Positions 1,063 to 59,531 of a stretch of 64,000 nucleotides of DNA are shown piece by piece. Each line of letters starts with the position of its first letter. Within the stretch, counting starts at the first letter, position 1. A program made the translations under genes and the position numbers. The DNA is from Lepidodermella squamata (Eukaryota > Animalia > Gastrotricha), in contig JBLDXI010000003.1 of assembly GCA_047495785.1 (NCBI GenBank), forward strand, positions 2,542,001 to 2,606,000, read 5' to 3'. Below the pieces are notes generated by a model. That model worked only from the letters and a program-made list of their open reading frames with translations. It ran no database searches and had not been told where the DNA came from.

Positions 1063-1260
1063 ATTTAAAATGGTGTCATGTCTATTTGAACACAGGATTG
1101 TGTATCGCCCAATGGCTATGCGTACACATCGAGTGTGCGTGATTGGCTACTTGAACACTGCGCGCGTTTAAATTTTACTATGTGTCACGCACAATTGTGT
1201 ACGCATAGCCATTGGGCGATACACTTTTCCCGTGTTCACATAGTCACATCCATTTAAAAT
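1063..1260. repeat. Inverted-repeat (MITE-like or hairpin) element
   Basis: 1100-1128 (gtgtatcgcccaatggctatgcgtacaca) is the exact reverse complement of 1196-1224. Imperfect complementarity extends outward (tgaacac/gtgttca, aaatgg/ccattt) and inward (tgtgcgtga/tcacgcaca). Confidence 0.8.
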
Positions 1261-3535
1261 GATCTTATTTCTAATCTTCCTTTTAGGCACCATCGAGGCC
1301 ATGGCTAGAAAACCAAAAGATATCGCCATGTTGGTTATGATACCTTTCACCGGCGAAGCACCAAAGGCTGGTGTCGCCTGCAAATTGGCGACACAAATCG
1401 TCTTGGATGAGGTAAACTCACGCCAGGACATTTTACCTGATTATCACGTTATGGCAGATTATCGTGACGAGGGCCCCGGTTCCTTTCTGGCGTCTCGAAT
1501 AACGCTTGACTTCAAGAACAATGCCTCGATACTGCAGTCACCTATCGTCGTCGGTCCCTACTTCTCCCCGGGCTGCAAGGCTCTTGCAGGGTTTGTCCAT
1601 CAACTTGATCTTGTCCTAATGGCAGCTGGATGCGGTTCATCAGTTTTCACCGCGAATAGGAAGATATACCCCAATTTGTACCGCCTACGATCGAGCGCGG
1701 ATTTGATAGTTTATCCTCAGCTGCGATTCATCCGTGAGGTTGGTAAATGGAATCGGATAGCCATTTTATCTTACGTGGGAAATCAACTGGACTACACAAT
1801 AGCCAGTCTTCTTCAGAAGGAAGCGGCAGGCAAAAATGTTTCGACCACTTTTTTCGATATCGTCACCGACTTCGATGATTTAGCAATGAATTCTCTGAAG
1901 CAAAGTGATTCGAGAGTGATTGTTTTACAGGTCGCTGAGCCTCCACTCGTGCTGCGATTTTTGTGCCAGTCATTCAAGTTCGGATTGACGGGTCCAAAAT
2001 ATGCATTTCTCTCACTAAATGCAGCCTTCTTGGAGCCTGACACACTACCTGAAGTGATTGAGCCGCAGTGCATGAAATCGATGATCTTCGAGCAGATGAA
2101 GGTAACAATCTGGGTTGGGGGTCTTGCTGTTACGGAGAAGCCGAACGAGCCAACATCGCTTGGCTTCAGCCTAATAGAGTTCGATAAAAAATTCAGCCTT
2201 GCCTCGAATGGATCCAAGCCTGCTGATTATGATAAAAGAACTCCATGTTTTGATGCTACGCTCCTTGCTTTATTAGCTCTAGATGGGACAGAGAGAAACC
2301 TAGCTATCCAAAACCTGAGTTTGACTGACTATACCACTAACCCAAAAGTTGTTATGCAAATAGCTAATTCCTCGTTAGGGGCATCGAACGGAATCGGGAT
2401 TCGAATGGGCCGGCTGCGATATTCAAAGCGAGGTGAAGTGGATGAGGACCCGTTTATAGCCACGGTATGGTCTCCAGATGACCATACCATGAACCACACG
2501 AAAAGCCGATACTTGTTAATCCCGAATAAGTCAGCAAATAGCTACGACAGCTACGTTTCAGAAAGGGTTGAAAGCATTGGCTGGGCAACTGTTAATGGAG
2601 AACCTCCTAAGGATTCTCCTTTTATAAGAATCGAAATACAAGACGTAGGGGACGAGTTGTTCCCCGTAGTTGCATCCTTCTCTTTCGTGGCTGCATCGGT
2701 ACACTTTATCGCTCAAGTTATATATTGGTCGAAGAAACCCGGTGAACACAACATTTTTCAACTATTTCCGATCGGACTTGCTGTCTTCAACGCTGGAGGA
2801 GTTATACTAAGTGCATCAGCGTTAGTCGGCTCGATGAAAGCCAGTTATGCTCCAGCAGCGGTTTGCGTCCTTCGATTGATATTCACTTTTACCGGTGTTG
2901 CATGCCTCACTGGCTCAATTTTCAGTCTAATGCTTATGTTCGCAAAATTTCACATCAACTCAGGGGCTGCTAAGCGTAAATCACGATCTCATTCTTCAAC
3001 GGCTTTCCCTAGGATATCAAATCAAGGAAGAAAGGTCAAACTCAGCACGGATGAACATAAGACAATTGCTAGTCTGCGTCACAGATTCATAACGATCGTA
3101 GTCGTGTCGGCATTCGGAGTGTTACTTATAATTTGGCTAATCGTCGATCCCACTCAGTTCAAGTTTCGCCAAATTGCTGACACACCCATATATATCGCAA
3201 GCGAAGATGCGTATGTCAGCTATCAAGTTCCAGTCTGCTATTCAAGCTATGATCATGTGTTCATAATCACGATAGGTGGGGTGATAGGGATTCTGTTACT
3301 AATCTCTGCACATCTAGCCCTCCAGCTACGTCACGCTGAAGAATTAACGCAATTCAAGGAGTTCAACATTGTCAGGATCCTGATTGCAACATTAGTTCCC
3401 ATTTTAGTTTGTTCATTCCTGCTAGGAATTTTATTGCCATCTCCAATCACTCAAAAGCTGATTTTGACATTCATGACGTTAATCTCCGCACTAGTAACAG
3501 GCATCGTGACGCTGCTAGCAGTGTGTCAGAAATAA
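1259..3535 (+). CDS. Class C GPCR, GABA-B-receptor-like (Venus flytrap + 7TM), intronless
   Basis: Signal peptide; ANF-receptor/VFT motifs (EVNSRQDILPDY, VVGPYFS, YPNLYR, WNRIAIL, DSRVIV); no cysteine-rich domain; seven hydrophobic helices including WLIVDP. Confidence 0.85.
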   Translation: MILFLIFLLGTIEAMARKPKDIAMLVMIPFTGEAPKAGVACKLATQIVLDEVNSRQDILPDYHVMADYRDEGPGSFLASRITLDFKNNASILQSPIVVGPYFSPGCKALAGFVHQLDLVLMAAGCGSSVFTANRKIYPNLYRLRSSADLIVYPQLRFIREVGKWNRIAILSYVGNQLDYTIASLLQKEAAGKNVSTTFFDIVTDFDDLAMNSLKQSDSRVIVLQVAEPPLVLRFLCQSFKFGLTGPKYAFLSLNAAFLEPDTLPEVIEPQCMKSMIFEQMKVTIWVGGLAVTEKPNEPTSLGFSLIEFDKKFSLASNGSKPADYDKRTPCFDATLLALLALDGTERNLAIQNLSLTDYTTNPKVVMQIANSSLGASNGIGIRMGRLRYSKRGEVDEDPFIATVWSPDDHTMNHTKSRYLLIPNKSANSYDSYVSERVESIGWATVNGEPPKDSPFIRIEIQDVGDELFPVVASFSFVAASVHFIAQVIYWSKKPGEHNIFQLFPIGLAVFNAGGVILSASALVGSMKASYAPAAVCVLRLIFTFTGVACLTGSIFSLMLMFAKFHINSGAAKRKSRSHSSTAFPRISNQGRKVKLSTDEHKTIASLRHRFITIVVVSAFGVLLIIWLIVDPTQFKFRQIADTPIYIASEDAYVSYQVPVCYSSYDHVFIITIGGVIGILLLISAHLALQLRHAEELTQFKEFNIVRILIATLVPILVCSFLLGILLPSPITQKLILTFMTLISALVTGIVTLLAVCQK

Positions 3536-6083: not shown

Positions 6084-8770
6084 ATGAGTCCTCGAAACCG
6101 AGTGTTACCTCGGTCTAATGATGCTCCAAGTCCAGTAATTGATGACTACAGCGAAGATGGTACGGAACGCATCTCAAGAAATAACACCACGACAAATTTT
6201 GACAAAGCCGGTTGGGCCAGCCGGCACTCCTCAAAATTCAACTTAGGGGATATTTTCGCTAACAACTGCCTGGCAGCTGTTTTCGATCCGCAAGCCGAAA
6301 CAGCAACTGGTCGTGGAATACAAATGTTTTGGGTACGATATTTTTTATAGAAACAGCAATGAACTTTGACTGTTTGCGTTGCCTAGGTCGTTATTGTTTC
6401 GATCATTTTCACCTCTTCGATTCTAGTTCAAGTGTATACGGACATCGATTTATCAAGATCTAGATCGATCAACGCCAGAGAAATCTACGTAGGCAGCGCA
6501 AATATGGGATTTGATTTGACTAAAAACTTTGTTTTTCAGGCATCTCGGTCGCTAGTCAATTCAGGTCAGGTTCAAAAGTTCGAAAATTTGTAAGCATATC
6601 TTGTCTGTTTCAGTTTTTGACATGGTGGAACTATTGGCAAAAGAGATGGATGTGACCTACGAGTAAATTCTCCAATTCAGAAAAATTGGACAAAATGATA
6701 ATTATTGATGAAAGGTTTAACAAGGGACCGTACGACATTTATCTACAGAAATCCCAGGATATCACGAGAAGTGTTGACCAGGTGAAAAAATCCATGGCGT
6801 TTTGGTCAATTTCGTATAATTCGATTTATATGTTCAGAATCTGCTAACAAATACGCGCTGGCCAACGGAGGCAGATTTGGCAGCTATACCTGTGGAGCTT
6901 AGAGTCAACCTTACCAATCCGACTGTTCTCAGGGCAGCCATCCGGGCACAGCGAGATATGCGTCGGGCTATTAATGGTACTCCAGGTAAGCTTGTGTGCA
7001 AGAGGGAATACAGGATGAAATTTTGCTGATAAATTCAGAGGCTGATGTATTGAGATTTTACTCTACAATAATCGAACAGCTCACTACTGTTGGCGGAGCC
7101 ATCATTTCAAGATCGCCAAGGTTTACTGGCTATCAAGATCTGCTTTCGATCACTCCAACTTTTCAAATGGTTGGTTCAATTTTGCCCAACAATTTTACTT
7201 TCATAAATTTTGGCTTCAAATTACAGTGGATGAGTTTTAAACAATACTCCTCAGTCGGGAGAAAGCTGGCTTATGAAAGCAAGTGCTTGATTATAAGTGT
7301 TATGAGGTTCTTGAATCGCTATTTAAACAGATCGCACAATGGAATACGACGACCCTGTGTACACTAATTTGCTGGGCTATTTCCTGAAATATCAGGAATA
7401 TATGTCTGTAGCTGCTCGAATGTCCGAATATGCCTCCGATCAGTTTGTAAACCTTACAGCTCAAGATGAAAACAAAAATGTAGAGGCCATGCACGCACTG
7501 GTGAGTTGAGAATCCACTGTTACTCTGTTCTCAGTCTCAAGGCTCAATCGAACTATAGGTATTGGGAGCAGACTTCAACCTGATAGATGGCTGGACGTAC
7601 GGAGATGTGATGGTTAAACAGGACGTGAACATTCAATATGCTCTAAATGAATTGAGACGACGGATCGACTACTTCTTGACTACTCAAGCAGAAGCTTGGC
7701 CAGAAAAAGATAAATTTTGTGAGTAGTGCAAAGAGTTTCAGGTTCTAACTATAACTCACTTGATGCCCTAGCTGCCCCAATGTTCGCGATTTCCGCTGCT
7801 TTTGCTGTTACAACCTTTATTTTGCACGTGGTTGCTACGCGCATAATTCAAAAAGAAATTTGGAAAAATTATTTATTCCTTGATGGGCTGAAAGAAGCTC
7901 TGAAGCTATTGTACGATTATCTACCTCGCGATTTGGTTGGCCTTGCAATGTCGGAGCAAGTTGGCCCCGTCAGACATTTCGGAGGTAAACGCACTTCTTA
8001 TATGACATTTTCTTTATCTCATGTAAACCAGACACGTGTATCGCAATGATGGACATATACAACGCCGATGATCTATATATGGATCATGAACCCAAAGACT
8101 TCGTTGCTATTCTGAACCGCGCTTATGAATTGGTTGAGAGCAACATTATGAAGTCGAATTGCTTCAAAGTTGAAGTCCTGAGTAAGTTTTTTACTAGGTT
8201 TTCTTCATGAAATGTATTGAAATGAATTCTTCTCAGGCGATCATTTCATCCTGGGAACCGGTGTTGGCGAGCATCATGCGCTGGACCACGTAGGCTCTTT
8301 CAACCTGCCAGCTAGATATATCATATCACATTTTCAGGTGGTTGAGCTGGTGTACATTGCGCTGGATTTGCAAGAAAAAGTAGCAGAAATGAACAGCTTT
8401 TTCCCTCCGAATGAAGAAGTCCGCTTCCGAATGGCGATTCACAGTGGCCCATGCTTTGCAAGAGTTGTCTATTTGCAAGTTGCTAGAATGGCCATAGTTG
8501 GAACCCTGCTTGAAACTACGGCGCTTGTTCACGCGACTAGCATCGGTTACTTTCGATTCTAATGCATTTTCTTATGATAATCTCGAGGTTTTTATAGCTT
8601 CAAAGGTTCAAGTTACTCAAACGGTTTATGAACGCCTCAACAATCTTGGCAGTGATGTCGCGTTCTCAGCTCGTGGCTCTATTGGAGTTAAGAGTGAAAG
8701 ACTCAATCTGTATTGGGCATTCTGGCTCGACGAATCTATGTTCGCTAACGAGAATGAAAGCATGCCCTAG
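6084..8770 (+). CDS. Membrane NIT-domain-like guanylyl-cyclase-fold protein 1 (multi-exon; catalytically incomplete)
   Basis: Manual splicing gives TM, helical NIT-like region, second TM, LYDYLPRDLV linker, then class III cyclase fold (MMDIYN, FKVEVLSD, RFRMAIHSGP, KVQVTQ, FSARG). Confidence 0.75.
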
Positions 8771-9134
8771 ACTCTTCTACCTCTCTCTATAATCCTGATA
8801 CTGATTTCAGGGTATTATGTACCAATCACGAATGTCTTATTCAGGCTTGCGGCATCAATTTTTTATGCAAAATCACGCAAAAAAATAGCTAATCTTTTAC
8901 TAATCACCCGCGTGCTTTGGCTTTTATTCATTGTGCAGCTTATTGTTCTGAAATCCTAAATGATATATCTGACGTTCTTTGGAAAAAGAAATTTATATAT
9001 AGCACTCAATAGATACTGCACGTGACATAAAATACTCTAAAATCACACGAATATAAAAACACTCAAAATAATAAGTTGCGTCTGTGTTCCGCAAAATGAT
9101 GGCAGTTTAAAGGGTTGTTAGAGCCATTTTCAGG

Positions 9135-11966
9135 TTACTTTCTACGCCTACTCCCTGCTTCAGATTCTCCATTTACAGATGCTGCTCGCGACGCGAGGGA
9201 GCTAACCGTGCTCAGTGTATCATGATCGTCGAATATCAGCCCGGCGGTTGCTTCGTCTGCAGAAACCCAATAGACGGGAATCTCAGCCTTAAAATAATAT
9301 TAATAACATTAGCCCGAAAGATTGCAGAATTACCTCCCCGCGATCGATAACGCCCCGGTATGTCATATCAAGTTCAATCGGGCTAGTTAGCAAGCGGCTA
9401 TAGGTCGTCGCAGTGACCTGCATTTTCATAGGCAAACAAGCCGCGTGAGCGATAGCAGCAAGCTGCAGAACGTTCCCGAATAGCACGACCCTTGGCACCT
9501 GGAGGTAGACGATGCGGCCGTAGCCAATGCCAACATGAACGCCAATGCGAATTTGTAGTATTTTGTGCTGCTCATCAGTGTTGTTGTTCAAAGCTTTCAC
9601 AGCGTCTATAAGCTCCAGGCCAGCGAAAACATGCTCGATAACATTATCGACAGGGTGAAATTCACCCATTCCACTAGCGATTGTAACGTTATCGCCTGGT
9701 TCGGAGTGTCAATGTAAAGAATTACTGTAAAAGACTTGGTACTTACCAAACACTTCAACTTTGAAGCAATTGTATTTGGTAAAGCAAAGCTCCATTTGTT
9801 CGAAATATTCCGAAAGTTTTTCTGAGAATTCGTTCGCTTCGAGACATTGGGCCAATGTCTCGGAGTTAAATAGGTCCACAATCATGACGCAAAGGCCTTA
9901 GCATGGAAAAATTGTGTTTAAATGGCTTTTAAATGCTATAAGATTACTGTCGAAGCGTTTAACAGTCGTGGCTGTATCGGATCCATTTCTTACAGGTTTG
10001 ATCAGATGAGATGGAACGTAGTCATAATGCAGCGAGAGCGCCTCCTTCAAAGCTCGAAGTTTCGAAATGTACTTATCGACTTGCTGCAAAAGGTGCCAGC
10101 TTCCAGCGATATGGATGAAAAATGCTACGACAGCGATTCCACCAGCGACAGCGTACATGGCAACCGCTTAAAATAGGAAATTTGTATGGACTATCAGTGA
10201 CTTTGGAAAACTTACAGAATATTTCGTCGCTGGCCAACTCACTAGGGTCGTAGATGTCAGCAGCTGCAGCGAAAGCCACCTTAACTTGGCTAATAACATA
10301 GAGAATCCCTTGCTCTGCCTTTGCCGCAGTTGAAATCCAGCTATCCAATGTAATTTTATCAAACCGCCGCTCATCCATCTGTTTATATTTGATATACATT
10401 CAAATTCACAATTTCACTAAAATGTTCGAGCTAACATAGCCTTGGTAGGCCTCCATATCCTTGTAAAAATCTTGCGATGTGTAGTTATCAAGTTGAGCTT
10501 TGCTAACTTCACTGAAAAGGCGGTTGTTTGACAGGGACTGTGCATATCCCTCACGAGCTCGAACAAGATCTCGGTACACTTTGTAAACAAAATAATCAAA
10601 AGCTGAAATCCGAGATACGATAATTACTTACCGAAGTCATTCATGCTTCTAGTAGCCATTCCTTTAAAAAAGTCCAAAAAACTCTCCGCAAATCCAGGAA
10701 TAAAAGTTTAAGAAACGAACGTTCTCTAAGCAGCTTTCGTCCAGCGGTCGTATACTTTCGATAGCTCATCCACTGAAAAAAACATGTCATCATTTAGGAA
10801 AAGGAAAAATGAGTCCGGTACCATTTGATGATTTGGATGAATGGAGATGAGTAGGCGGAATCCTGGAAATCTCTGGGTGTTGAGTACTGCCGAACGAATG
10901 ACTTGATAAAGGCTATCGATAACGTTCAAATAGAAGTAGGTTGCTGCCTCCTCTGTCATAGAAATAATAGCCGTGTGTGATTAGGCAATTCTCATACCTA
11001 TGTCCTATGTGATGAACCCATACCTGAGAGATTATTGCGCCTCGTTTCTCTGTGAAACCGCAGGGCCGTTCGAAGAGCTGTTTGTGAAGAAACATTTGCC
11101 CGAAACTCAGGCTCCAAGGTCATCAAGTCGTCATCGTTCGGCCAATCGTCAGTCATAATCAGTTTCTACGATGTATAGGTACATCACAGATTTTACAGCA
11201 GCTAAAATTTCTAAAATACCGTGTCAACGTTCTGCATGACACTTTGGGCATTTTGCTGGAAAAAGTCGTAGCTTCCGGTGTTATATTCGTAAAAAACCTC
11301 CATTTCGTAGACCAATAGAGTCACCAAATCAAGCTGGTTCATAATTATTTTCATATTCCGCTGAAAAACTCCTTATCAGTGCACTCATTCAAATAGAAAT
11401 TGTAACTTGCCCTCAACGTTGTGTCCTCAACTTGTCGATCAATAACGCCAGCAGCATCAGGTAATACTTGAACAATTATGCCTGCGACGAATCCAAGAGC
11501 GATAGTTACGACCTGGTTTGTAATGAAACATTTGAAATTATTCTCGGAGTAACGACATTAGTTGTCATACCAAGAAAAGTTGTAGCATTCTAGATCGATT
11601 GGTCGACTCGGAACAGAGCAGGTCTGACAATTGTTTTCCCAACCTTCGCGAGCCGTGAAAAGCCCTACCTCCTATCGTAGAGGCCCCAGTGTTAGTCTCA
11701 TAGTCGAAAGAAGACTCCATGGAACTATTCTGATCAGCGTCGTATGCCTGCTGTGTCATGTTTTTCATTGCGATGATATCCCGAGATTCAATCGCAGCTT
11801 CAGTTTTCCCGCGTGAGGACTTAGACTTCTTGTCACTAGCTTTCGACGGGTTGGGTGGTTTCGCTGATGTGGGAATAGGTACGGTATTTGGCCTAGGTTC
11901 CATTGCCTTTGCGGTGGCATGTTGGTCTTCACAGTCGCAAGGACAATCAGGTTTGTGTTGAACCAT
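9135..11966 (-). CDS. Membrane NIT-domain-like guanylyl-cyclase-fold protein 2 (multi-exon; catalytically incomplete)
   Basis: Paralogue of the previous gene: HYDYVPSHL, IVDLFN, FKVEVFGD, LQIRIGVHVG, VPRVVLFG, KMQVT, MTYRG. Last exon ends ...GSRRRK* at 9135. Confidence 0.75.
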
Positions 11967-12187: not shown

Positions 12188-15100
12188 TTACGTCCTGATG
12201 ACGCTGTTGAATTCCTCGATAAGCCAAGCTCGGCACTCGCGTTTTTCGTCATCATCCTCCATCTCATCAAGTTCGTACCAGAGTGCCAGTTGCCAGTCCT
12301 CCATCTCGCCGGGCGACATGCCGATGTCTTCGATTACTACATCTTCTTCGTCAGCTCCGTCAGCACGGATTTCACGGTACCTTTCTACTACCTGAGCCCA
12401 GCTCACCACGTCTATCAGCTGGGCATGCTGGCGACCCCTGCGATAGTACGACACGCCGCGTAAGTCATCCTCGGGTCTTCCTGTGAGAACGGCATTTTCG
12501 TCGCTGCTATTGCCTCCGATTCCGAAAAGCCGTTCGAAAAACGCTTTGAAGCGGCCTTTAAGCTTAAATTCATGCTGAGCTGCTGCTGCTGGAGTCATTA
12601 CAGCGAGTCTTTCCACCGCTGCGTTTTCTCCAGCGTCAAAAACTCCAGCAGCGTCTTCAATCAACATCAGGTTATAGGCTGCTTCACTCATAGATATACA
12701 CATTCCTTTCTTGAATTGAACAAGAGCCTTGACGTACATAAACGGCTGTTGAAGAGAAAGAATTAGATTAGGAGAAATTAGGTCAAACAACGAACTTTGA
12801 CGAAGAGATTAAGGGGAGAAGGAGTTGGTGCGGTCTTTATCATTCCACGAATAAGCTTCGCTCGACCGAACTTCCATTCAATGTCACTTTGCCGATGCAT
12901 TCGTTCGTAGACATCGGCTGAAACTGCAATCATGAGGGTTAGGATGATAAGCACCATAATTATATGGAAAATGGCATATTGTATGCGTAGCATAGCTGTG
13001 GTAATATCTGCTGAGTTTCGAACCGATGGTACATCATTGTAGTCACCCAAGTTGAATACGCTGTACCATAGAAGTTGAAAGTTCGTCGTCAAAGTTGACA
13101 AAAATTCGTAATTAGCCCGGCATCCCTTGTCCTTCATGCAGAAATGAGTAAATAAAATTATTAGCTAGCCGTTTCTAATTTTTCCTCACCGAATTTGTCG
13201 GTGGCGAACATCCATACGGAACTTGCGTGTTACATATGCATGAATTAGTCAACTCGGGCAAAGCATCTGAGAAAATAAAAATAAAATAATTCTTTGTTCC
13301 CTCTAATAATTCGCTTGAGACCAGGGCAAAGTGGAGCGTAAACAGTGCTCAACTGAAGCCAAAACCCAACAAAAAATATCATGAGCATGATGAGGAGCAT
13401 TAGGATTTCCTCAATCATGTATTTCATGATTATAGTCATCGGACCGAAGCGATGATCCAAAGCTGTGAAATCCAAGCACTGCAACGTAAATCAAAGAATC
13501 AATATATTTGCTGTTAATTTCAGAATATAGTTACCATTTGGATTGAAAGGAGAACAGGTACAGACAAAACTTGATTCCGAATGTACATCATCATGTCTCC
13601 AGTTGGAGATTTAACGCTAAAGAAAAGGTTGATCGTTAGAATAAATATTCTGCAATTGGCTTACTCGTTGATACAGATAACAATTAGTTGTATGAACATG
13701 GCAACTGCACTGAGTCCCAGGGTAACTGATTTCACTATCCGCATCTCGCGATAGCCACTTGGATTTGTGAGCTCTGACGTTAAATTCCCGCCCAGCATTA
13801 AGAGTAGAATAACTTCGTTCCAAGTCGGTAGAAAATTTTCCCGCGTGTGGTTAGGGTAAATTGGAGAAACGGCAGTGATGAACAAAACAGCAATGAACAT
13901 GATGTGGGAAACGACGTAGCCTGGAACGTTTCCAACTGGTTCAAAAGTGAAATTCTGAATTTGAAGAAATTACCCATGAATCTGATGACTGGAATTCTGT
14001 GGTACTTGTGGGGCAAAGGTAGAACAAAGAAGGCGAGGATAGGAGGGCACAACAAAAAAGTGAAAAACAGGCAGACGAGCTGGAAGTTGGACCAGCCTAA
14101 ATTGCCGTCCCACCAAACGTCGGTGAGATAGCGCTGTACGGAAGGTTTCGCAATAACGGTTTTCAGGCCATCGTCCAGCATCACTGTCGGAAAAAGTATA
14201 CCTTCCGATGTACCTTGAATTTGAATCTTACCATCAATAACTTGTTGACCCTTGGCATCAATAGCCTGCAAGACAGCTGGGGCCGAAGATTGGCTAATGG
14301 CTATGTCAACCAATATCGAACACATTTTCTCGCAAAACCGACTGGCAACGAGAAGCTCTTTCGTATGTTGCTTATGGGTAACCGAAAGCTGCCTAAATCT
14401 TCGGTTAAGAGTGGCAGCCGTACTAAGAGGTGACGGCGAAACGAGGGTGAACTCTTCAATCGCTTGCTGCTTATTAACGCGGCCGCAACTCATCAGATCA
14501 AAAATGAATTCATCGTCTTGAAGCAACGCTTCGGCGTCGAATTTATGCTTCAGGAGAAAATAGAAAACTTCTGTGTGGCCAGAAGCTGCTGCGAGACTTA
14601 AGGGAGTCTTTCCGCTGATGCTTGAATGAGCTGTCGAAGCCCCAAGCTCGATAAGAAGGGCTGACACCTCAAGTTTTCCATGCTTCGTAGCAAAGAGTAA
14701 AGGAGACCATCCCATCTAAATTGGAACCTATTAGTATTCATTCAATTATGGACAATGTTTTTCAGTTACATAATCGACAGCGTTAACTTGTGCGCCTTGA
14801 CCGACGAAGCTTGCAACCATTTCCAAGTGCCCATATTGAGCCGCGAGCATCAATGGGGTCATGCCTGTGTTGTCAGATTCGTTCAGCAGATGAGGAGACT
14901 TCGCTAAGATCAAACTGCTGATTGTCATGTGGCCGTTGATAGCAGCCAAATGCACGGCAGTCATTCCTGTTTCCTTACTTCTAGCTTCAACGTTTACCCC
15001 ATGACTGTTCAGAAGTAGCCGCAGGGCAGCATCTTGCCCGGAAAAGGCCGCGAAGTCCAAGGCTGTGAAACCATACTGCAAAGCGAGTCACCTTAAAATG

Positions 15101-18100
15101 TTCCATTTCAAGTACAAATGCTCACATCGATGGACAACAGCTTCTGCAGTTGAACATCGCCGACTTTTGATGCGGGAATTCTGAGACGTTTTGAACAAAT
15201 GTCAGCTGGAATATTGAAAAGGAGTTCCCGAAGCGCGTCCCCCTTGCCGTAGAAGGCTTCAGGGTAACATTGAGAGCTAAAATTAATTTCCATATTTTCT
15301 TCAATTCTCATTACCTGCAACATGGATCGGGGACATCCCATTCTGTAACTTCAAAGTGAGAATTGGTTGCAGTCATTAAGCTATTTTACATTTTTGCTGA
15401 TTATATTGCATTCGATGCCCCGCGATCGTATCATAGCCAAAACTTCAGCATGACCATTCATTGCAGCGGAGTGAATGGTAGTCATACCTGCAGCGTTTTC
15501 CTCATACTGAGACGCACCTGCATCAATCAAAAAAGCGACGACTTCCACATTTCCCTTGAGAGCCGCCATATGAATAGACAATGACTCAGAATCCTGTTTA
15601 CAAAACAAATGGAAGTCAACAAATGATTTCACAAACGCGACTAACCCTGCTTCTGGTTGCGATAGCAACGCCTCTATTGAATCGCATCAATTCGCGAATG
15701 ACGGCAATAGAGCCGGAAGCAGCTGCCAAATGGGAGCACAGCATGCCATCCTGAATAATAATAGCAAGAGGATTTGCACAAGTCAACTCGAAAAAGTCCA
15801 ACTTGAGTGGTCGATATGAAGGCTAATTCGGGAAAACTGATCAGAAAAAACTTGACGACTTCTGAATGATTGTTTTTGGCTGCCAAATGAATAGGAAGCC
15901 CAACGACCTGATATTTTATAAAGAAGTGAAAAAACTCCGGCTAAACAAAGGCTGGGACGTACATCATCACGAGCTCGAACATTCGCCCTCAGACGCACTA
16001 AAGCCTGAACTACTTTCAGGTGGCCATTTTCAGCCGCCAGATGAAGGGGCGTTTTCTTAGCCTGGTATTCAAAATCAATAATATATCTCGCATGAAAAAC
16101 CTACGGTTGCCAAATTACCAAAGAAAATGCATCGACTGTAGCCCCGTATGCACGGATGAGGGTTTGGACCAAGTTTGAGTGTCCGTTTTCCGCTGCCTAT
16201 ACAAAAAAAGATGAAACTAACATAAAATTGTTTTAGGAAACAAATACCAGGTGTAGAGGTGTGATTCCCAATTTCGACTTCGCGTTCACGAAAGCTTTTC
16301 GTGACAATAGTAGCTCGCAACATTTCGTGTAGCCCTTCTCAGCGGCTAAATGTAAAGCACCGAGACCATGCTAAATAAACCAGAGAAGTTTGATGCAAGT
16401 TTCGTGAAACCAGGTCTACTAATCACCTCGTCAAATACATCAGCTCGCACTTCGTGGTCCAGCAGCAGCTTGACAACATCCTCGTGGCCATGGTAAGCGG
16501 CTGTCAACAAAGGCGACCATCCATTCTAGAATTTCCCGGATATCTAAAACCTTTGGCTTGCCACGCTAAATAGATCATTACCTTAGATTGACGATTCGCT
16601 ATTGAATGATACTCCGACGCAACGAATTTTCCAATTTCTGACAGAGTCTCGGCAGCATTGCATCGAGCGGCGTAATGTAACGGAAGTTCAGACGTCTGTC
16701 GTCAAATAATTGAGCCATGTCAAGTTCGCAGTCCCAAAACATCATCTCTTACCCATTTCGTTGAGGCAAGCAGGTCAGCGCCAAATTCCAGCAATAATTG
16801 CGCTAACAATGCTCCCTCTGTAAATCGAACTTCGCAAGCCATGTGAAGAGCTGTCTCGCCCTCTGAAGTCACCATGTTGACCAGAATCTCTGAGGCAGTC
16901 CGATCGCGCGAACTTCTCAATAAAGCCTTCGCAGCATCGTAATGTCGGTGGCGAACCGCGAGGTGAAGCGCTGATTCTTCGCGATTCGATAGCTGCGTAA
17001 CATTGGCTCCCTCGGATAAGAACAGCATTACCATGTCCAAATACCCGTGGCGGCAGGCAACATGAAGAGGCGTTTCGCCAGTTTCCGTATTCGTCGCATT
17101 CACGTCAGCGCCTGATAACAGTAGCATTTTCGCGCATTCATATCCGTGACTATGCCGACTTGCCGAATGAAGCGGTGTTTCCTTACGAGGGCCACCTTTT
17201 ACATTTGTACTAGCGCCGAACCCTATTAGTAGCTCAAGGAACTCAGGTTTGTTGTGAAGAACAGCTAGATGAAGCGCCGTATAACCTTCTTTCGTCTTAG
17301 CGCCAATTGGTGCTCCATGGTTAAGGAGGATTCGAGCAACATTTATGTGACCATTTTCAGCCTGTGAATTATTTGCTTAAAATCAACGTTTTGGTAATTC
17401 TGAAATCTTACAGCAATATGAAGCGGGGTTTTCTTGTCTTTATTCGCCATATGTAATGGAGCATCCCGCTTGATCTTAAATGCAAATAAATTCAATAATT
17501 TGTCACTTCGGAAACAACTCAATTCATACCAAAGCTAGGGCTGTCTTTTCGTTGCCCAGAAATGCAGACATGTGCATTAGAGTCGAGCCGTCTTTCGTCC
17601 TCATAAGGCTATCAGCGTCAATTTTGTCTATCATGTAAGTCATGAGAGAAGTTTCGCCAACTTTCGCCGCCAAATGGCAAGGTGTAGCGTCATGCTTGTC
17701 CTGTAAATTGGCGCTGGCACGGCCAACTTGGTGCAAAACTTTCATCAGAACGAAATCGCGAGTATCGGCCGCTATGTGCATCGGCGTTTTACCCTCGACG
17801 TTGACTACGTCAGCATTCATCTTGCCGTGAACAAGTAACGCTTTTGCTGTGTCGATGTCGTGTTTCAATGCGCACAGGTGAAGCAAAGAGTTGCCTGTGT
17901 TTGGCTCTTTCCAGGAAACTTGCTCGGATCGGAATTGCTCGAGTAGCAGTCGAATGAGTGGAATATTCGAGCTTTTAACCGCATAAACTATGGGCAAATT
18001 TCCATGCTGTATGAAGGTCAATTTGAAATTAGAGCGAGAGAAGTTCTCGGGAATTTACGTTATCCAATTCCAGACGAAATTTCGTTGGCATGCATTTCAG

Positions 18101-21559: not shown

Positions 21560-22666
21560 ATGGATATTGATATTGCTATGGGAATTTCCCGCAGACGTCC
21601 CAAGCGCTACTTGAAAGATCATTTCATTAACGAAGGTCGCTTCGCTGCCGTTTATAAAGCTAAAGAGGAGAGCTCTGGAAGGATCGTCGCTGTAAAAAAG
21701 ATCCGAGTTGGTACTAGGGAAGAAAGCCGTGACGGGCTGAATAGAACTGCTCTTCGCGAAGTAAAGTTACTGCGAGAACTCGAGCACCCAAATGTCGTGC
21801 GTCTGCTAGATGTGTTCGGCAAGCGTTCGGAGATATGCTTAGTTTTCGAGTACCTGGAGTTTGACTTGGATGCGGTATTAACCGATCCTAGCATTATCAT
21901 CACCCCTGCCATTGTAAAGAATTACATGGTCCAGCTGCTCTGCGGCTTGCGCTTTCTGCACGCTCATTTTATCATTCACCGCGATCTTAAACCGAACAAC
22001 TTGATGATGAATAATGATGGTGTCTTGAAAATCTGCGATTTTGGCTTAGCTCGTCGTTTTGGATCACCTGATCGTCCGTTAACCTCTCAAGTTGTTACCA
22101 GATGGTATCGCGCCCCTGAACTTTTATTTGGCGCAAGCTTTTATGGGGTTGGCGTTGACATGTGGGCTGTAGGATGCATTTTCTCACAGTTGTACACAAA
22201 GGCGCCGCTGTTTCCCGGTGAAAGTGATCTCAGTCAATTGGATTTCATCTTTCAACTCATTGGCGCTCCGAGCACCGACCCTGAGAACGAGTGCTACTGG
22301 CCAGATGCTAATATTCTCCCGGGTTATGTGACTTTCAACTCTCGCCCTGTTCAGGGCCAACCTACGGTTTTCCAAAAGCTTTCCGCGTACCTTCCAGCGG
22401 TATCAAACGACGCAATTGAGCTTCTTGTTCAGTTGTTGCGTCTTGATCCTAACAAGCGACCAACTGCTGCGGAGGCTATTGATCACAAGTATTTCTCTTC
22501 GCCTCCTCAGCCAGCTTCAGCTCGGGCGATGCCTAAACCGCAAATGGCTGCCAATGTCCCGACTGGTATGGACAAAAATGCTTTCTCGTTCGGTAGTGCT
22601 GTCGATAATTCACCTGCTGTTGTCGACGGATTTGAACTGAAAAGAGCTAAACTTCAGAAGAAATAA
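21560..22666 (+). CDS. CDK7: Cyclin-dependent kinase 7 (CAK/TFIIH kinase), intronless CDS
   Basis: NRTALRE helix, HRDLKPNNL, DFGLARRFGSPDRPLTSQVVTRWYRAPELLFGA. Confidence 0.93.
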   Translation: MDIDIAMGISRRRPKRYLKDHFINEGRFAAVYKAKEESSGRIVAVKKIRVGTREESRDGLNRTALREVKLLRELEHPNVVRLLDVFGKRSEICLVFEYLEFDLDAVLTDPSIIITPAIVKNYMVQLLCGLRFLHAHFIIHRDLKPNNLMMNNDGVLKICDFGLARRFGSPDRPLTSQVVTRWYRAPELLFGASFYGVGVDMWAVGCIFSQLYTKAPLFPGESDLSQLDFIFQLIGAPSTDPENECYWPDANILPGYVTFNSRPVQGQPTVFQKLSAYLPAVSNDAIELLVQLLRLDPNKRPTAAEAIDHKYFSSPPQPASARAMPKPQMAANVPTGMDKNAFSFGSAVDNSPAVVDGFELKRAKLQKK

Positions 22667-38300: not shown

Positions 38301-41300
38301 CCGGCAATTGCGGACTTGCGTCATGTTACGTTGTATCAGATTGAACGAGTCTTTTTCGCTAGAAATTATACGGCTGGTCTACTTTCAGCGCCTTCGTTTA
38401 GAATATGCCAGGTATTTTTCTAGAATTTTAATTTTGATTTTTTAGTGGGTCTCAATCTTTGCACCACTAAAATTGAGGCATTACTAAATTTTCCCAATTA
38501 TTTTTATCTGGGCTTTTTCTTGACTTTGGTTGGGCTCGATGATGAATGAATTGGGATTCTAAGGAAGACCTAAAACTCGGAAAATTCATTTGGGAAAATC
38601 TAGGGATGGAATCTTCAATTTATTGCCGGAAACCTAATTTTTCCACTTTTTTGGGGAAAATTAGCTAAAATAATTTTTTAAATTTCTACTTCCAGGAAAC
38701 TGATGAAAGATTTGCGCAGCATGTTGCTCGACTTTCGGTTGTTTTAACGGCCGATCATCCTGCTTTGGCCTTGCCTCAGCAACTTCACCGTGACGTGCCA
38801 TGGCCGGCCGTTCAGTACCATATTCGGCAAATGGGGGCTGCGAGACACCCTCTAGATAAAGCCGCCTGTCTTTGCGACGCAATTACGTCACTGAGTCGTC
38901 TTCTCTCGCTTGCTCTGCAAGGTTTGTAACAAAAACTGTTTTTAATGTCAACTTTCTCAATTGAACTTTTAGGATTTTTTATTTTAGTTGCTCGGAATTT
39001 ACAGAGGAATTTCGTAGCAAAATTTCAGAACTTCTTAAATTTTGAATTTTTTGAATCTTGATTCAGCCTCTTAGCGGCGAGGCCTTCAACCTTCAACAGG
39101 AAATTTGTTCGAATTTTATTATCATTCAAACTTTTGGGCAGGCGATGCGTTCAAAATCAAAATCTTCGTGGCTCAAGTCAATTGACACAGAATACAGTTC
39201 TTTGCTTGAGACCGGAACTATCAAGGAAATCAAAAATTCTGAAATTCCGAAAGATGTCGAAATTGTGGATACAAAATGGGTTCTCAGAAAGAAAAGAAAT
39301 GCCCAAGGGAACATTCTCAAGAAAAGGCACAACTTGTAGCAAGGGGTTTTCTTCAAGTTACCTCATTTTCCGAAACATACTCGCCAACTGCCTCGCTAAC
39401 TATAATTGGACTTTTGATTATGTTTGCGGTAGTAAATGGTTGGAAAATCCGGGGTGTTGATTTTGTGACTGCCTATCTCAACGCTTATTTGCCTGAAAAT
39501 GAGAAAGTTTACGTTTCAATCCCAGCCCCGTATTCGAAGCCAGGCTATTCGTGGAAATTAATAACAAGTTTTACGGCTTGCGCTCGAGTGCGCGCAATTG
39601 GTATTTCTGTTTGAGAGATCATCTTTGCAAAATTGGATGGAAGCCATGTCAATCTGAACCTTGTCTTTTCTTCTACTTTTCTGGAACTGAACTTATCGCG
39701 GCATGTGCATTTTTTGTGGATGATTTTTTGACTGTTGGTCGAACTGATGAGATAATTGATGCAAGAATTGCAGAATTGAAAGCAAAATTCAAAATTGTTG
39801 AGATGCAAGAATTGAATCTCTTACTTGGAATATCAATCAAAATTGGACCAAATTTCGTTGCTCTCAATCAGTCTCATTACATCGAAAAAATCATTGAGAA
39901 ATTTGGATTGAAGGAATTACAACCTTGCAAAATTCCTCTTGACCCAAATGTGAATTTTTTACCGAATTCTGGAACTTGCGCTAATGATGACAGAAAGTTT
40001 TTTCAATCTTTAATTGGAAGTTTGAATTATTTGGCTATTGCAACTCGACCAGACATTTCTTTCGCAATCAGTGAATTATCGAAATTTCTTTGTAATCCTA
40101 CTGGGGATCTTTTTCGCGAAGAAGATTGCATGCATATTGACTTTGGTCTGATTTTTTCTCGCAACGAAAACGAAAAAATAACTGGTTTTTGTGCTGCAAG
40201 TTACGCTGGCGATTTAATTTCGAGGAAATCGCAAAGTGGTTTTTGCTATAAACTCGGTGGCGCTGTTTTTAGCTGGACTAGCAAAAGGCAAGAAACGATT
40301 GCATTGGCGACTTGCGCGCTAGAGGCTGTGTGGTTATCTCGTATTTTTCTCGATCTTCGAATGATAATTTCTCCGATAACGATTTTCTGTGACTCGCGCT
40401 CAGCTATTTGCATTTCGCAAAATCCTATTTCTTCGAGAAAAGTGAAGCATATTGAAGTGAAACATCACTAAATTCGCGAGCTTTGCGATAACAAAACTAT
40501 TGAAGTCAAATGGGTAAAATCGGCTGATCAAGTTGCTGATTTGCTTACCAAAGCGTTACCATATCTGCAATTTGAAAATCTTCGTGCAAAAATGGGAGTA
40601 CGTTCAACAAAATTTAACAATCTTTTATTATCAGTCACTCTCTTCGCTTTATTCTCGTTATCATGTGGGCAAAGTATTCAAACATCCAGTTTGACTTTGG
40701 TCAGCAAGATAAACATTACAAATGCCGAAAAGGCAGAAAGCGCCATGACCGCCAATAATTCGGTAATTGTCTTAACGATCGATGATTTGTCCTTGGCTGA
40801 TTCGATGAATGATCAAAATGTCCCAAAATTTAAACGTTGGCTTCTAAAACCAAATTGTGACGCTGATTATCCTCGAAAAATAATAGCTCAATGCACAATG
40901 GGTTTGGTAAACACACAATCTTGATTCAGCCTCTTAGCGGCGAGGCCTTCAACCTGCAACTGGAAATTTGTTCGAATTTTATTATCATTTACTTGAATTT
41001 CGGGGATGAATAACTCGAGCAATGACTTTCCATATTTCATCAAATAATAATAATAGTCGTTCGTGTCTACTGTTTTTCGAAACTCCAAAAATGGTCCAAA
41101 AAGAGGCAATTATCCGAGGGCGCTATTATTTATTGGCAATTGGCTAATTTCACCATCGCAAGTCGTTTGCGCTGTTGACTTCTCGGTTGTCTGACCCACG
41201 CTGCTAATAAATCCTCGGCATCCGTTATCCGTAAAATTTGCAGTTTAAGGCTACGCAATTGGGCATGGTAGAATAGTAATTCTAATTTCTATTCCTCCAT

Positions 41301-58611: not shown

Positions 58612-58863
58612 TTTACTTCGGTGAGAAAAAAGAGCGGAAACTATCCCGAAGTTACATACTGTGGCAAATTAAACAGGTGCGCCAAATTCTAAGAATTACG
58701 GCACAGGTGACAGAATTTTCCCGTGTATGACGTGATCTTCGTTAGCAAACTCATGTTTTATCTCAAGCGGAATATATCACCTGTTGAACTAATGGGTGCG
58801 GCTAGTTTAAATACCCTGAGGGCCAAAGGATAAAACTGCAGTTTCGGATAGTTTTTTGTAAAC

Positions 58864-59531
58864 ATGCGAATTTTGATTGTTTTGTCGATCGCGGCGTTTG
58901 TCGCTGCGGCTCACGCCATGGATAATTCACCTGACGATGAATCTCCGGTATAAGTTTAATAAGGTCATATTCAGCTGGTATTAAGTTTTGTTCACAGGTT
59001 TCGCGTGGCTACGGAGTTCAAGTTAGAGGAAAAATCGCCGCTAGACGACCTTCACAAGGCGGCACAGTCAGTTCTTCTGCTCAATACAAAGCCGCAAAAA
59101 CTACGATGAAGAGCAGCAAGAAGGCTGGAAAGCCTAAAACAAAGAAATCCATCAAGTCTAAGAAGGCTAAGAAGGCGCTTCGCGGGAAGGATCTGAAAAA
59201 GTTGCTTAAAAAGACCTTAAAGAATGCGATCACGTCTGGCGATCTCCGCAACTGGGTCAAGAAGTTCAAGAAGCAGTCGAAGAAGGGAGCATCTCGCTCA
59301 AAGAAAGCAGGTCGCAAAAACCGCGGCGCTGCTCGCCGAGTCACCAAGGCTGGACGCAAGAGCCGCGGAGGTCTAAAGAATCGTGGCCAACTTCAGGCAC
59401 GCAAGAACCGCTTCATGGCTGCGCGCAAAAACCGCGATCGCCGATTCCGCCGTGAACGCCCCAATACCCGAGACCGTCGCTCCCGCGCTTTGCGCCTTCT
59501 GGCTGCGCGCAATCGGCTTCGGAAGAATTAA
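58864..59531 (+). CDS. Secreted highly cationic Lys/Arg-rich protein
   Basis: Exon 1 MRILIVLSIAAFVAAAHA-MDNSPDDESP; intron 58948-58997; exon 2 in frame with ORF 59106-59531; AATAAA downstream. Confidence 0.8.

What the first reader, a model, noticed from the sequence alone, without database searches (positions are those of the whole stretch)
6084..11966. Convergent pair of NIT-like receptor cyclases that both keep only half of the catalytic site
Seen: both retain the two metal-binding Asp (MDIYN...LSD; VDLFN...FGD) and the KVE Glu. The canonical PRYCLFGDTVNTASRM is replaced by ARMAIVGTLLETTALV and PRVVLFGNVLQLAAIA, losing the Cys, Asn and Arg. Established: class III cyclases need the Asp pair from one protomer and Asn/Arg from the other. 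Inference: neither homodimers nor their mutual heterodimer should make cGMP. They would be obligate alpha-like subunits needing a third partner, or pseudo-enzyme sensors or inhibitors. Intact frames and splice sites argue for selection.
Basis: partly seen in the sequence, partly recalled or inferred. Interest (0 to 1): 0.72.

Follow-up and report, generated by a model that had tools for sequence, protein, structure and literature searches.

The report
Half-site NIT-type receptor cyclase pair
Two neighbouring, expressed and well-preserved animal genes encode membrane receptors related to the invertebrate NIT-type guanylyl cyclases whose enzyme part has lost half of its active site, so they probably signal only with a partner or without making cGMP; the scan has met this gene family many times in this genome.

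Summary
Window 6084-8770 (+) and 11966-9135 (-) are two intact, convergent, multi-exon genes (666 and 741 codons, about 35% identical). Each has a cytoplasmic N-terminus, TM1, a helical ectodomain of about 300 residues, TM2, a linker helix and a class III cyclase domain. Spliced RNA-like contigs confirm many introns, one GC-AG. A second haplotype differs by 24 synonymous and 7 replacement changes, with all 7 indels in introns. Both proteins keep the two metal aspartates and the KVE glutamate. Both lack the Cys, Asn and Arg of the canonical motif, and also the Gly-Phe-Thr phosphate loop. Five related genes on metagenome contigs from a relative show the same pattern, so it is an old, selected family trait. 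Pfam does not detect NIT on any exon. However, alignments of the ectodomain pieces match the NIT region of insect NIT-cyclases in the right order, well above shuffled controls. The first NIT 'ER' motif reads 'EM'. Best reading: ligand-sensing, alpha/C1-like half-site subunits of a very divergent NIT-cyclase branch, needing a complete partner or acting without catalysis. No partner lies in the window. The scan already noted this family on other DNA of this genome. It is a new variant of a known kind.

The parts
6084..8770 (+). Gene A, coding region of 666 codons plus stop, in 14 exons: 6084-6332, 6387-6564, 6614-6662, 6715-6781, 6838-6985, 7039-7169, 7227-7278, 7331-7500, 7559-7718, 7772-7984, 8032-8181, 8237-8289, 8338-8545, 8598-8770
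   Evidence: Frame-consistent exon model. Spliced contigs of run X1 show joints 6332|6387, 6564|6614, 6662|6715, 6781|6838, 6985|7039, 7278|7331, 7500|7559 and 7718|7772. A loose end supports 7169|7227.
7279..7330 (+). GC-AG intron of gene A (donor GCAAGT)
   Evidence: Two spliced contigs skip exactly these 52 nt, ends GC..AG (table 5).
6324..6437 (+). Gene A first membrane helix (MFW / VVIVSIIFTSSILVQVY), split by intron 6333-6386
   Evidence: Hydrophobic run read from the exon translations; inference.
6438..7771 (+). Gene A ectodomain (about 300 residues, helical, NIT-like). It holds the 'EM' motif at 6643-6648 and two conserved N-x-S/T sequons (NLT in exon 5, NLT in exon 8).
   Evidence: Family piece alignments. 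hhalign against insect NIT-cyclases is collinear, with scores 13, 28.3 and 19.5 against shuffles of 13.5 +/- 2.5 and 10.8 +/- 2.1. Pfam NIT was not detected.
7774..7984 (+). Gene A second membrane helix (7774-7836) and linker helix with the motif LLYDYLPRDLV
   Evidence: Translation. About 36% identical to the same exon of gene B.
8032..8716 (+). Gene A cyclase-homology domain. Asp1 8052-8054, Glu 8172-8174, Asp2 8239-8241. Degenerate motif 8482-8529, with Glu 8512-8514 in place of Asn and Leu 8524-8526 in place of Arg.
   Evidence: Pfam PF00211 on three exons, collinear; alignments with complete cyclases.
9135..11966 (-). Gene B, coding region of 741 codons plus stop, in 13 exons: 11966-11571, 11512-11411, 11360-11220, 11165-11024, 10952-10822, 10772-10721, 10661-10632, 10602-10418, 10378-10216, 10166-9948, 9896-9747, 9695-9334, 9287-9135
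   Evidence: Frame-consistent model. Spliced contigs shown for 9334|9287 and 10216|10166. The GC donor at 11410 and the 30-nt exon 10661-10632 are predicted only, from the paralogue.
10216..11461 (-). Gene B ectodomain (NIT-like). It holds the 'EM' motif at 11306-11301, the sequons NVS (exon 4) and NYT (exon 8), and WMSYRKYTTAGRKLL at 10772-10728.
   Evidence: Pfam NIT not detected.
9948..10164 (-). Gene B second membrane helix (10164-10102) and linker helix (LHYDYVPSHLI)
   Evidence: Translation; tblastn match to gene A.
9334..9896 (-). Gene B cyclase-homology domain. Asp1 9876-9874, Glu 9756-9754, Asp2 9693-9691. Degenerate motif 9495-9448, with Gln 9465-9463 in place of Asn and Ile 9453-9451 in place of Arg.
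   Evidence: Pfam PF00211, E = 7e-10 on exon 12. Alignments. RNA-like contig 9461-9548 has no differences (table 8).
8771..9134 (.). 364-nt gap between the two stop codons, holding both 3' UTRs
   Evidence: RNA-like contigs cover all of it (tables 2 and 8). Their strand is not known.

Best explanation
Genes A and B are two old paralogues (about 35% identical) of a lineage-specific, very divergent branch of the animal two-TM NIT-type receptor cyclases. Shown: each is intact, spliced, transcribed and under purifying selection. Each has the order N-terminus, TM1, helical ectodomain, TM2, linker helix, class III cyclase domain, with no kinase-homology domain. The cyclase domain keeps the two metal-binding aspartates but lacks the transition-state Asn and Arg, the guanine-specifying Cys and the Gly-Phe-Thr phosphate loop. 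This pattern is shared by every family member I could read, in two species. Inferred: a class III active site is built from the Asp pair of one chain and the Asn/Arg pair of the other. So A homodimers, B homodimers and A/B heterodimers cannot make cGMP. The most likely working mode is that each protein is a ligand-sensing, alpha/C1-like subunit. Its ectodomain binds a ligand, probably not nitrate or nitrite because the first NIT Arg is Met. Its linker helix passes the signal on. Its cyclase-homology domain pairs with a catalytically complete cyclase chain, giving one working site and one dead site, as in soluble guanylyl cyclase, membrane adenylyl cyclase and nematode ODR-1/DAF-11.
For: Gene models and expression: spliced contigs of run X1 confirm 8 introns of A and 2 of B shown (20 further joints were not listed). 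Selection: among the listed haplotype or strain differences, 24 are synonymous and 7 are replacements, over about 944 synonymous and 3277 replacement sites, so pN/pS is about 0.08. All 7 indels lie in introns, and one 51-nt intron alone carries 9 substitutions. Cyclase domain: PF00211 matches exons in collinear order. Residue pattern in seven genes (A, B and five genes on ENA metagenome contigs, loci L001, L002, L006, L007, L009): Asp1 in 7 of 7, Asp2 in 6 of 6 readable, the Arg of 'PR' in 7 of 7, Asn in 0 of 7, Arg in 0 of 7, Cys in 0 of 7, Gly-Phe-Thr in 0 of 7. The family is one clade (SH-aLRT 99). Invariant aspartates in a family that has diverged to about 30% identity argue that metal or nucleotide binding still matters. 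NIT-cyclase kinship: ectodomain piece alignments hit the NIT region of insect NIT-cyclases in the right order. They map to P0072 residues 7-65, 62-160 and 184-281, inside its Pfam NIT match 22-269. Scores are 28.3 (0 of 100 shuffles reach it, z about 6) and 19.5 (1 of 96, z about 4.2). Shared motifs are LQLERSEVAFY against L..EME.FY.Y, and YVNYIRYDALAKDLL against WMSYRKYTTAGRKLL; two N-glycosylation sequons also align. Precedents: obligate heterodimeric receptor cyclase ODR-1/DAF-11 (PMC5225109), and heterodimeric class III cyclases whose missing residues are complemented by the partner (PMC8815786). Lead only, not tested here: the scan's notes report complete NIT-type cyclases elsewhere in this genome.
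Against: No partner is identified: the window holds no third cyclase, and I could not search the genome. The Gly-Phe-Thr loop, which functional Asp-donating chains (sGC alpha, adenylyl cyclase C1; my own knowledge) keep, is replaced by a conserved Asn-x-x. The retained half is therefore not canonical either. The guanine-specifying Glu is kept in A and B but varies in the family (E, Q, F, A, S). The cyclase domain sits on a very long branch, and the tree cannot place it among guanylyl or adenylyl cyclases. That fits a domain that changed its job. Pfam NIT is not detected on any exon or ORF piece, and ectodomain piece I scores no better than shuffles.
Confidence: 0.5

Rival explanations
1. Pure pseudo-enzyme receptors. 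The cyclase-homology domain no longer takes part in catalysis at all. It serves as a dimerisation, scaffold or nucleotide/metal-binding module. The receptor then signals by recruiting other proteins, or damps complete cyclases as a dominant-negative partner.
For: Four separate catalytic elements are gone: Asn, Arg, Cys and the Gly-Phe-Thr loop. The cyclase-domain stem is very long. New family-specific conserved motifs have appeared, such as G-x-G-E-x-H and an invariant His two places after the lost Arg. The same genome is reported, in unchecked notes, to hold other dead-cyclase families.
Against: Both metal aspartates and the 'PR' arginine are invariant across seven genes at about 30% identity. 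A mere scaffold would not be expected to keep them. Strong purifying selection fits either reading.
Confidence: 0.33
2. Unconventional but active cyclases. Other residues, such as the invariant His or the Gln/Glu at the Asn position, take over transition-state stabilisation, and homodimers still make some cyclic nucleotide.
For: The Asp pair, the Arg of 'PR' and the RxGxHxG core are conserved. There is an invariant His close to the lost Arg.
Against: The residue at the Asn position is not conserved (Q, E, K, P), and the Arg position is always aliphatic. From my own knowledge of class III cyclase mutagenesis, loss of either residue lowers activity by orders of magnitude. The phosphate loop is also changed.
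Confidence: 0.08
3. The ectodomain is not NIT-derived. The family is an independent fusion of some other two-TM helical sensor to a cyclase domain, and the resemblance to NIT-cyclases is convergent or comes from shared helical composition.
For: There is no Pfam NIT hit on any piece. Protein-atlas and PDB sequence searches of a 244-residue ectodomain ORF gave nothing. Piece I is not above shuffles. The cyclase tree does not join the family to NIT-cyclases.
Against: Three pieces land in the right order, end to end, inside the NIT region of insect NIT-cyclases. Two of them exceed column-shuffled and reversed controls. They share motifs and two aligned glycosylation sequons. The overall architecture and size match NIT-cyclases of 583-750 residues.
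Confidence: 0.12
4. Decaying or unexpressed gene copies.
For: None beyond the lost catalytic residues.
Against: Frames are open through 14 and 13 exons. Transcripts are spliced. pN/pS is about 0.08 and indels occur only in introns. The same pattern is conserved in a second species.
Confidence: 0.01

Closest known systems
Animal NIT-domain guanylyl cyclases (NIT-GC; Moroz et al. 2020, PMC7400543; Platynereis NIT-GC1/2, bioRxiv 10.1101/2023.08.02.551600)
   Same: Two-pass membrane receptor with a helical ectodomain between the TM helices, a linker helix and a C-terminal class III cyclase domain, without a kinase-homology domain. Similar size: the insect members fetched here are 583-750 residues. 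The ectodomain matches their NIT region in order at the profile level. They also occur as lineage-specific expansions.
   Different: Known NIT-GCs have a complete catalytic centre (MPRYCLFGDTVNTASRM), and NIT-GC1 makes cGMP after an NO donor. Here Asn, Arg, Cys and the Gly-Phe-Thr loop are lost. Pfam NIT is not detected, and the first NIT Glu-Arg is Glu-Met. The cyclase domain is so diverged that a tree cannot place it.
Asp-donating half-site chains of heterodimeric class III cyclases: soluble guanylyl cyclase alpha, membrane adenylyl cyclase C1
   Same: They keep the two metal aspartates and lack the Asn/Arg pair, so they are active only with a chain that supplies it (PMC8815786 for the principle; residue details from my own knowledge).
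   Different: Those chains keep the Gly-Phe-Thr phosphate loop and have a known fixed partner. Here the loop is replaced and no partner is known. The sensor is an extracellular NIT-like domain, not H-NOX or a 6-TM bundle.
Caenorhabditis elegans ODR-1/DAF-11 obligate heterodimeric receptor guanylyl cyclase (PMC5225109)
   Same: Receptor-type cyclases in which each chain provides only part of a single catalytic site. They belong to a large, lineage-specific sensory expansion.
   Different: ODR-1 and DAF-11 are single-pass receptors with an ANF-receptor ectodomain and a kinase-homology domain. Heteromer formation is shown there and only inferred here.
Bacterial NIT domain (PF08376; NasR-type nitrate/nitrite sensor)
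   Same: A helical sensor of about 250 residues with two similar halves. The family aligns, through insect NIT-cyclases, to the region that Pfam calls NIT.
   Different: There is no direct sequence match. The conserved Arg of the first helix, thought to bind the anion (PMC7400543), is Met in all seven family genes.

Membership tests
Class III nucleotidyl cyclase catalytic domain (PF00211) | Sequence match to the domain profile | tested here: met
   Exon-wise, collinear matches in both genes. B exon 12 has E = 7e-10 and 39 bits against a cut-off of 21.9. The A exons score 18.3, 21.1 and 13.4 bits on consecutive parts of the profile.
Class III nucleotidyl cyclase catalytic domain (PF00211) | Two metal-binding aspartates | tested here: met
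   Present in A and B and in all readable family members.
Class III nucleotidyl cyclase catalytic domain (PF00211) | Transition-state Asn and Arg (TVNTASRM) | tested here: not met
   Asn is replaced by Glu (A) and Gln (B); Arg by Leu (A) and Ile (B). Both are lost in 7 of 7 family genes.
Class III nucleotidyl cyclase catalytic domain (PF00211) | Purine-specifying pair (Glu and Cys for GTP) | tested here: not met
   Glu is kept in A and B but varies in the family. Cys is replaced by Ala or Val, and lost in 7 of 7.
Class III nucleotidyl cyclase catalytic domain (PF00211) | Cyclase activity | not testable with these tools
   Needs expression and a cGMP/cAMP assay.
Animal NIT-domain guanylyl cyclases (NIT-GC) | Architecture TM, ectodomain, TM, linker helix, cyclase, with no kinase-homology domain | tested here: met
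   Exon translations. No kinase match on any exon. Same layout and size as the insect NIT-GCs.
Animal NIT-domain guanylyl cyclases (NIT-GC) | Pfam NIT (PF08376) match in the ectodomain | tested here: inconclusive
   No match at E up to 10 on any exon of A or B, or on larger ORF pieces of relatives. The whole spliced ectodomain could not be scanned, because the joined step was left out.
Animal NIT-domain guanylyl cyclases (NIT-GC) | Ectodomain homologous to that of accepted NIT-GCs | tested here: met
   hhalign of family pieces against 21 insect NIT-GCs gives collinear, adjacent matches inside the Pfam NIT envelope. Piece II scores 28.3 (0 of 100 shuffles reach it; reversed 19.3). Pieces III-IV score 19.5 (1 of 96; reversed 14.1). 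Piece I is not above shuffles. Support is moderate, not decisive.
Animal NIT-domain guanylyl cyclases (NIT-GC) | Conserved Arg of the first NIT helix (LQxER) | tested here: not met
   It reads E-M in A, B and all five relatives.
Animal NIT-domain guanylyl cyclases (NIT-GC) | Cyclase domain groups with NIT-GC cyclase domains | tested here: inconclusive
   The family is one clade (SH-aLRT 99) on a stem of about 4 changes per site. Its attachment is unresolved.
Half-site (alpha/C1-like) subunit of a heterodimeric class III cyclase | Asp pair kept, Asn/Arg pair lost | tested here: met
Half-site (alpha/C1-like) subunit of a heterodimeric class III cyclase | Gly-Phe-Thr phosphate loop after the first Asp kept | tested here: not met
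   The sequence is D-I-Y-N-A-D in A and D-L-F-N-S-E in B. An Asn replaces the Gly in 7 of 7 family genes.
Half-site (alpha/C1-like) subunit of a heterodimeric class III cyclase | A complementary partner chain exists and is co-expressed | not testable with these tools
   The 64-kb window holds no third cyclase, and the rest of the genome is not readable here. The scan's notes mention complete NIT-type cyclases elsewhere; I did not check them.

The most novel reading that the evidence does not exclude
The many genes of this family form a new chemoreceptor-like repertoire: this pair, the arrays the scan notes elsewhere in this genome, and the relatives in a second species. In this reading, variable NIT-derived ectodomains each sense a different ligand. 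Every member donates only the Asp half of an active site to one common, complete or Asn/Arg-only cyclase co-receptor. That would be a combinatorial 'tuning subunit plus common catalytic subunit' logic, not yet described for receptor cyclases with NIT-type sensors.
Probability: 0.22. Interest if true: 0.75.

Novelty: new variant of a known kind. Interest (0 to 1): 0.45.

Why it matters
NIT-type guanylyl cyclases were recognised in animals only in 2020, and one of them has been shown to work as an NO-dependent cGMP source. A whole, selected branch of that receptor type keeps the two metal aspartates but none of the partner-side residues. That would extend the half-site, obligate-heteromer principle (soluble guanylyl cyclase, ODR-1/DAF-11) to this receptor class, or add a new class of pseudo-enzyme receptors. 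It gives a clear experiment: co-expression with complete cyclases of the same animal. For genome annotation, these genes should not be named as active guanylate cyclases or as nitrate sensors.

Tried and rejected
1. Pfam NIT gave nothing on each ectodomain exon of A and B, or on larger ORF pieces of relatives.

2. A PDB sequence search and the protein-atlas search of a 244-residue ectodomain ORF (L009:964-1698) gave nothing usable. The atlas's own model has pLDDT 0.45. I therefore did not spend a structure job on half a domain with a shallow, partly misaligned alignment.

3. The search of 1.8 billion representatives with B exon 12 found only 58 hits. The nearest are ORF fragments from metagenome contigs, and there was no full-length annotated relative.

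4. A metagenome scan for relatives failed with an alignment, which had no conserved stretch. With B exon 12 alone, no relative was confirmed.

5. A cyclase-domain tree could not place the family, which sits on a long branch.

6. Identifying the organism failed. The CDK7 orthologue is only about 52% identical to all annotated animals and 78% to one metagenome ORF. The animal stays unidentified.

7. My first exon model of gene A was wrong at two places, a 116-nt intron and a 23-nt intron. The RNA-like contigs corrected it.

8. I expected the ectodomain to be more diverged between A and B than the cyclase domain. It is not: both are about 35% identical.

9. In one search, exon positions were chained only to find the codon of each variant.

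Full report
WHAT IS THERE

The stretch holds two convergent, intron-rich genes. Gene A runs on the + strand from the ATG at 6084 to the stop at 8768-8770. It has 14 exons and 666 codons. Gene B runs on the - strand from the ATG at 11966 to the stop at 9137-9135. It has 13 exons and 741 codons. The stops lie 364 nt apart. Introns are mostly 46-59 nt.

My first model of gene A was wrong in two places, and public data corrected it. Contigs of run X1 skip introns exactly and therefore come from spliced RNA. They show the joints 6332|6387, 6564|6614, 6662|6715, 6781|6838, 6985|7039, 7278|7331 (a GC-AG intron, two contigs), 7500|7559 and 7718|7772 in A. In B they show 9334|9287 and 10216|10166. Twenty further joints were not listed. 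The DNA run X2 has none of these joints. Two features of gene B rest on the paralogue only: the GC donor at 11410 and the 30-nt exon 10661-10632.

Both genes are therefore transcribed and correctly spliced. The RNA-like contig over 9461-9548, which covers the Gln codon that replaces the catalytic Asn in B, shows no difference from the DNA. No difference is listed in the motif of A either (40 further differences were not shown), so there is no sign that the transcript restores the canonical motif.

ARCHITECTURE

Each protein has a cytoplasmic N-terminus (about 80 residues in A, 130 in B) and a first membrane helix. An ectodomain of about 300 residues follows, then a second membrane helix. Next comes a linker helix carrying the LL..Y(L/V)P motif, which corresponds to the LLxQMLP motif that precedes guanylyl cyclase domains. 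A class III cyclase domain ends the protein. There is no kinase-homology domain.

Pfam PF00211 matches the cyclase exons in collinear order. In A these are profile positions 10-56, 77-139 and 144-180. In B they are 10-56 and 75-162, with E = 7e-10. A and B are about 35% identical along their whole length, ectodomain and cyclase domain alike. The window holds no third copy.

THE CATALYTIC RESIDUES

I aligned both proteins with complete cyclases: insect NIT-cyclases, a scallop two-TM cyclase and a kinase-homology receptor cyclase. Both keep the first metal Asp (MMDIYN, IVDLFN), the second metal Asp (LSD, FGD) and the Glu of KVE. They also keep the Arg of 'PR' and the RxGxHxG core.

Both lack the Cys of PRYC (Ala or Val instead). 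Both lack the Asn of TVNTA (Glu in A, Gln in B) and the Arg of ASRM (Leu in A, Ile in B).

If anything it understates the loss.

THIS IS A FAMILY TRAIT, NOT AN ACCIDENT OF TWO GENES

HMMER read 1.8 billion representative proteins with B exon 12 as query. It gave only 58 hits. The nearest (29-45% identity) are short ORF fragments, and the rest are ordinary cyclases at about 30%. The fragments lie on ENA metagenome contigs (loci L001, L002-L005, L006, L007/L008, L009). These carry whole genes of the same build, split by short introns at similar places.

In seven genes (A, B and five of these) the counts are as follows:
- First Asp: present in 7 of 7.
- Second Asp: present in 6 of 6 readable.
- Arg of 'PR': present in 7 of 7.
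- Asn, Arg, Cys and Gly-Phe-Thr: each present in 0 of 7.
- Position of the Gly: always Asn.
- Two places after the lost Arg: an invariant His.
- Position of the guanine-specifying Glu: variable (E, E, E, Q, F, A, S).

The family forms one clade (SH-aLRT 99) on a very long stem.

The CDK7 orthologue of the window is 78% identical to one ENA metagenome ORF and only about 52% identical to all annotated animals. So the contigs probably come from a relative of an animal lineage that has no close annotated genome. The half-site pattern therefore appears to predate the split of at least two species. I could not identify the animal.

SELECTION

Run X2 carries a second haplotype at about half depth. 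Among the differences listed for X1 and X2, 24 are synonymous, 7 change the amino acid and 9 lie in one 51-nt intron. With about 944 synonymous and 3277 replacement sites, pN/pS is about 0.08. All seven indels lie in introns. Only 40 of 80 differences were listed, so the figure is rough, but its direction is clear.

IS THE ECTODOMAIN NIT-LIKE?

Pfam NIT is not detected on any exon of A or B, nor on larger ORF pieces of the relatives. A PDB sequence search and a protein-atlas search of a 244-residue ectodomain ORF gave nothing.

I then fetched accepted NIT-cyclases: 25 insect proteins carrying PF08376 plus PF00211, 519-933 residues long. In P0072 the Pfam NIT match covers residues 22-269 (E = 9e-26). 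I compared alignments of the family's ectodomain pieces with an alignment of 21 of these proteins. The three pieces land in the right order and end to end:
- Piece I maps to P0072 residues 7-65, with score 13.0. This is no better than shuffles.
- Piece II maps to residues 62-160, with score 28.3. Column shuffles gave 13.5 +/- 2.5 and 0 of 100 reached it. The reversed alignment scored 19.3.
- Pieces III-IV map to residues 184-281, with score 19.5. Shuffles gave 10.8 +/- 2.1 and 1 of 96 reached it. The reversed alignment scored 14.1.

The aligned motifs are telling. LQLERSEVAFYIYT of NIT-cyclases corresponds to L..EME.FY.YN of the family. YVNYIRYDALAKDLL corresponds to WMSYRKYTTAGRKLL. Two N-x-S/T sequons align as well, which also fits an extracellular position.

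I conclude that the ectodomain is a distant relative of the NIT-cyclase ectodomain. The evidence is moderate. The Arg of the first conserved helix, one of the two arginines thought to hold the anion (PMC7400543), is Met in all seven genes. A nitrate, nitrite or NO-derived ligand is therefore doubtful.

The cyclase-domain tree does not help. The family's stem is so long that its place among guanylyl and adenylyl cyclases is unresolved.

HOW IT MOST LIKELY WORKS

Established knowledge: a class III active site lies at the dimer interface. It uses the Asp pair of one chain and the Asn/Arg pair, plus the base-specifying residues, of the other. Heterodimeric cyclases exist in which each chain lacks what the other supplies (PMC8815786). 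ODR-1/DAF-11 is an obligate heterodimeric receptor cyclase (PMC5225109).

It follows that A/A, B/B and A/B dimers have no complete site. Two readings remain.
- The proteins are ligand-sensing, Asp-donating subunits that pair with a complete or Asn/Arg-bearing cyclase. The invariance of both aspartates and of the 'PR' Arg in a family at about 30% identity favours this. I put it at about 0.5.
- The domain is a non-catalytic module for dimerisation, scaffolding or nucleotide binding, or a damper of complete cyclases. The loss of the Gly-Phe-Thr loop, the long stem and the new conserved motifs favour this. I put it at about 0.33.

Unconventional catalysis is unlikely, at about 0.08. Decay is excluded. 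No partner is in the window. The scan's own notes mention complete NIT-type cyclases elsewhere in this genome, which I could not check.

COMPARISON WITH WHAT IS KNOWN, AND NOVELTY

NIT-domain guanylyl cyclases are known in placozoans, cnidarians and many bilaterians (PMC7400543). Platynereis NIT-GC1 makes cGMP after an NO donor, and this requires its NIT domain (10.1101/2023.08.02.551600). Those proteins have complete catalytic centres. The two full-text searches aimed at this turned up no description of a half-site branch of this receptor type.

The scan itself has noted the same family repeatedly on other DNA of this genome, in arrays of eleven, six, three and two genes, with similar conclusions. 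Those notes were leads; what is stated above rests on my own tests.

The pair is therefore a further member of a new variant of a known kind, not a new kind.

Noticed in passing
window 7279-7330 and 11361-11410: GC-AG introns with the donor GCAAGT. The one in gene A is confirmed by two spliced contigs. The one in gene B is predicted from frame and from the paralogue.
   Followed up: partly
window about 11929-11949 (-); L007:2231-3673: Gene B starts with a Cys-rich CPCDC motif. The relative on L007 repeats such C-x-C..P..C-x-C-x-C motifs four or five times in a 480-residue N-terminal exon before TM1. This may be a metal-binding or lipidation module; gene A has none.
   Followed up: no
window 8771-9134: RNA-like contigs cover the whole 364-nt gap between the two convergent stop codons, so the 3' UTRs abut or overlap. 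Their strand cannot be told from contigs.
   Followed up: no
window 21560-22663 (+): Intronless CDK7 orthologue. It is about 52% identical to all annotated animal CDK7s and 78% identical to one ENA metagenome ORF (P0201). The genome belongs to a lineage without close annotated relatives, and a relative occurs in environmental metagenomes.
   Followed up: partly
window 9897-9947: The second haplotype in run X2 differs at 9 of 51 intron bases plus one indel, while the flanking exons carry mostly synonymous changes. Heterozygosity or haplotype divergence in the sample is high.
   Followed up: partly
P0033, P0038: Other guanylyl cyclase fragments in public data keep a fully canonical Asp half (YKVETIGDAYMVASG) but have Asn replaced by Glu and Arg by Leu. 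Half-site receptor cyclases may be commoner than annotated.
   Followed up: no
window 1259-3535 (+): Single 758-residue ORF with an ANF-receptor ligand-binding region (PF01094, E = 1e-14), followed by several hydrophobic helices. By eye it looks like a family C GPCR-like receptor.
   Followed up: partly
window 57835-61497 (-): Two neighbouring genes of the amiloride-sensitive sodium channel family (PF00858; E = 6e-32 and 1e-24).
   Followed up: partly
window 12778-18021 (-): Ankyrin-repeat exons (PF12796), followed by exons with hydrophobic helices that look TRP-channel-like by eye.
   Followed up: partly
window 39551-40471 (+): Fragment of a Ty1/copia-type reverse transcriptase (PF07727, E = 4e-19).
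   Followed up: partly
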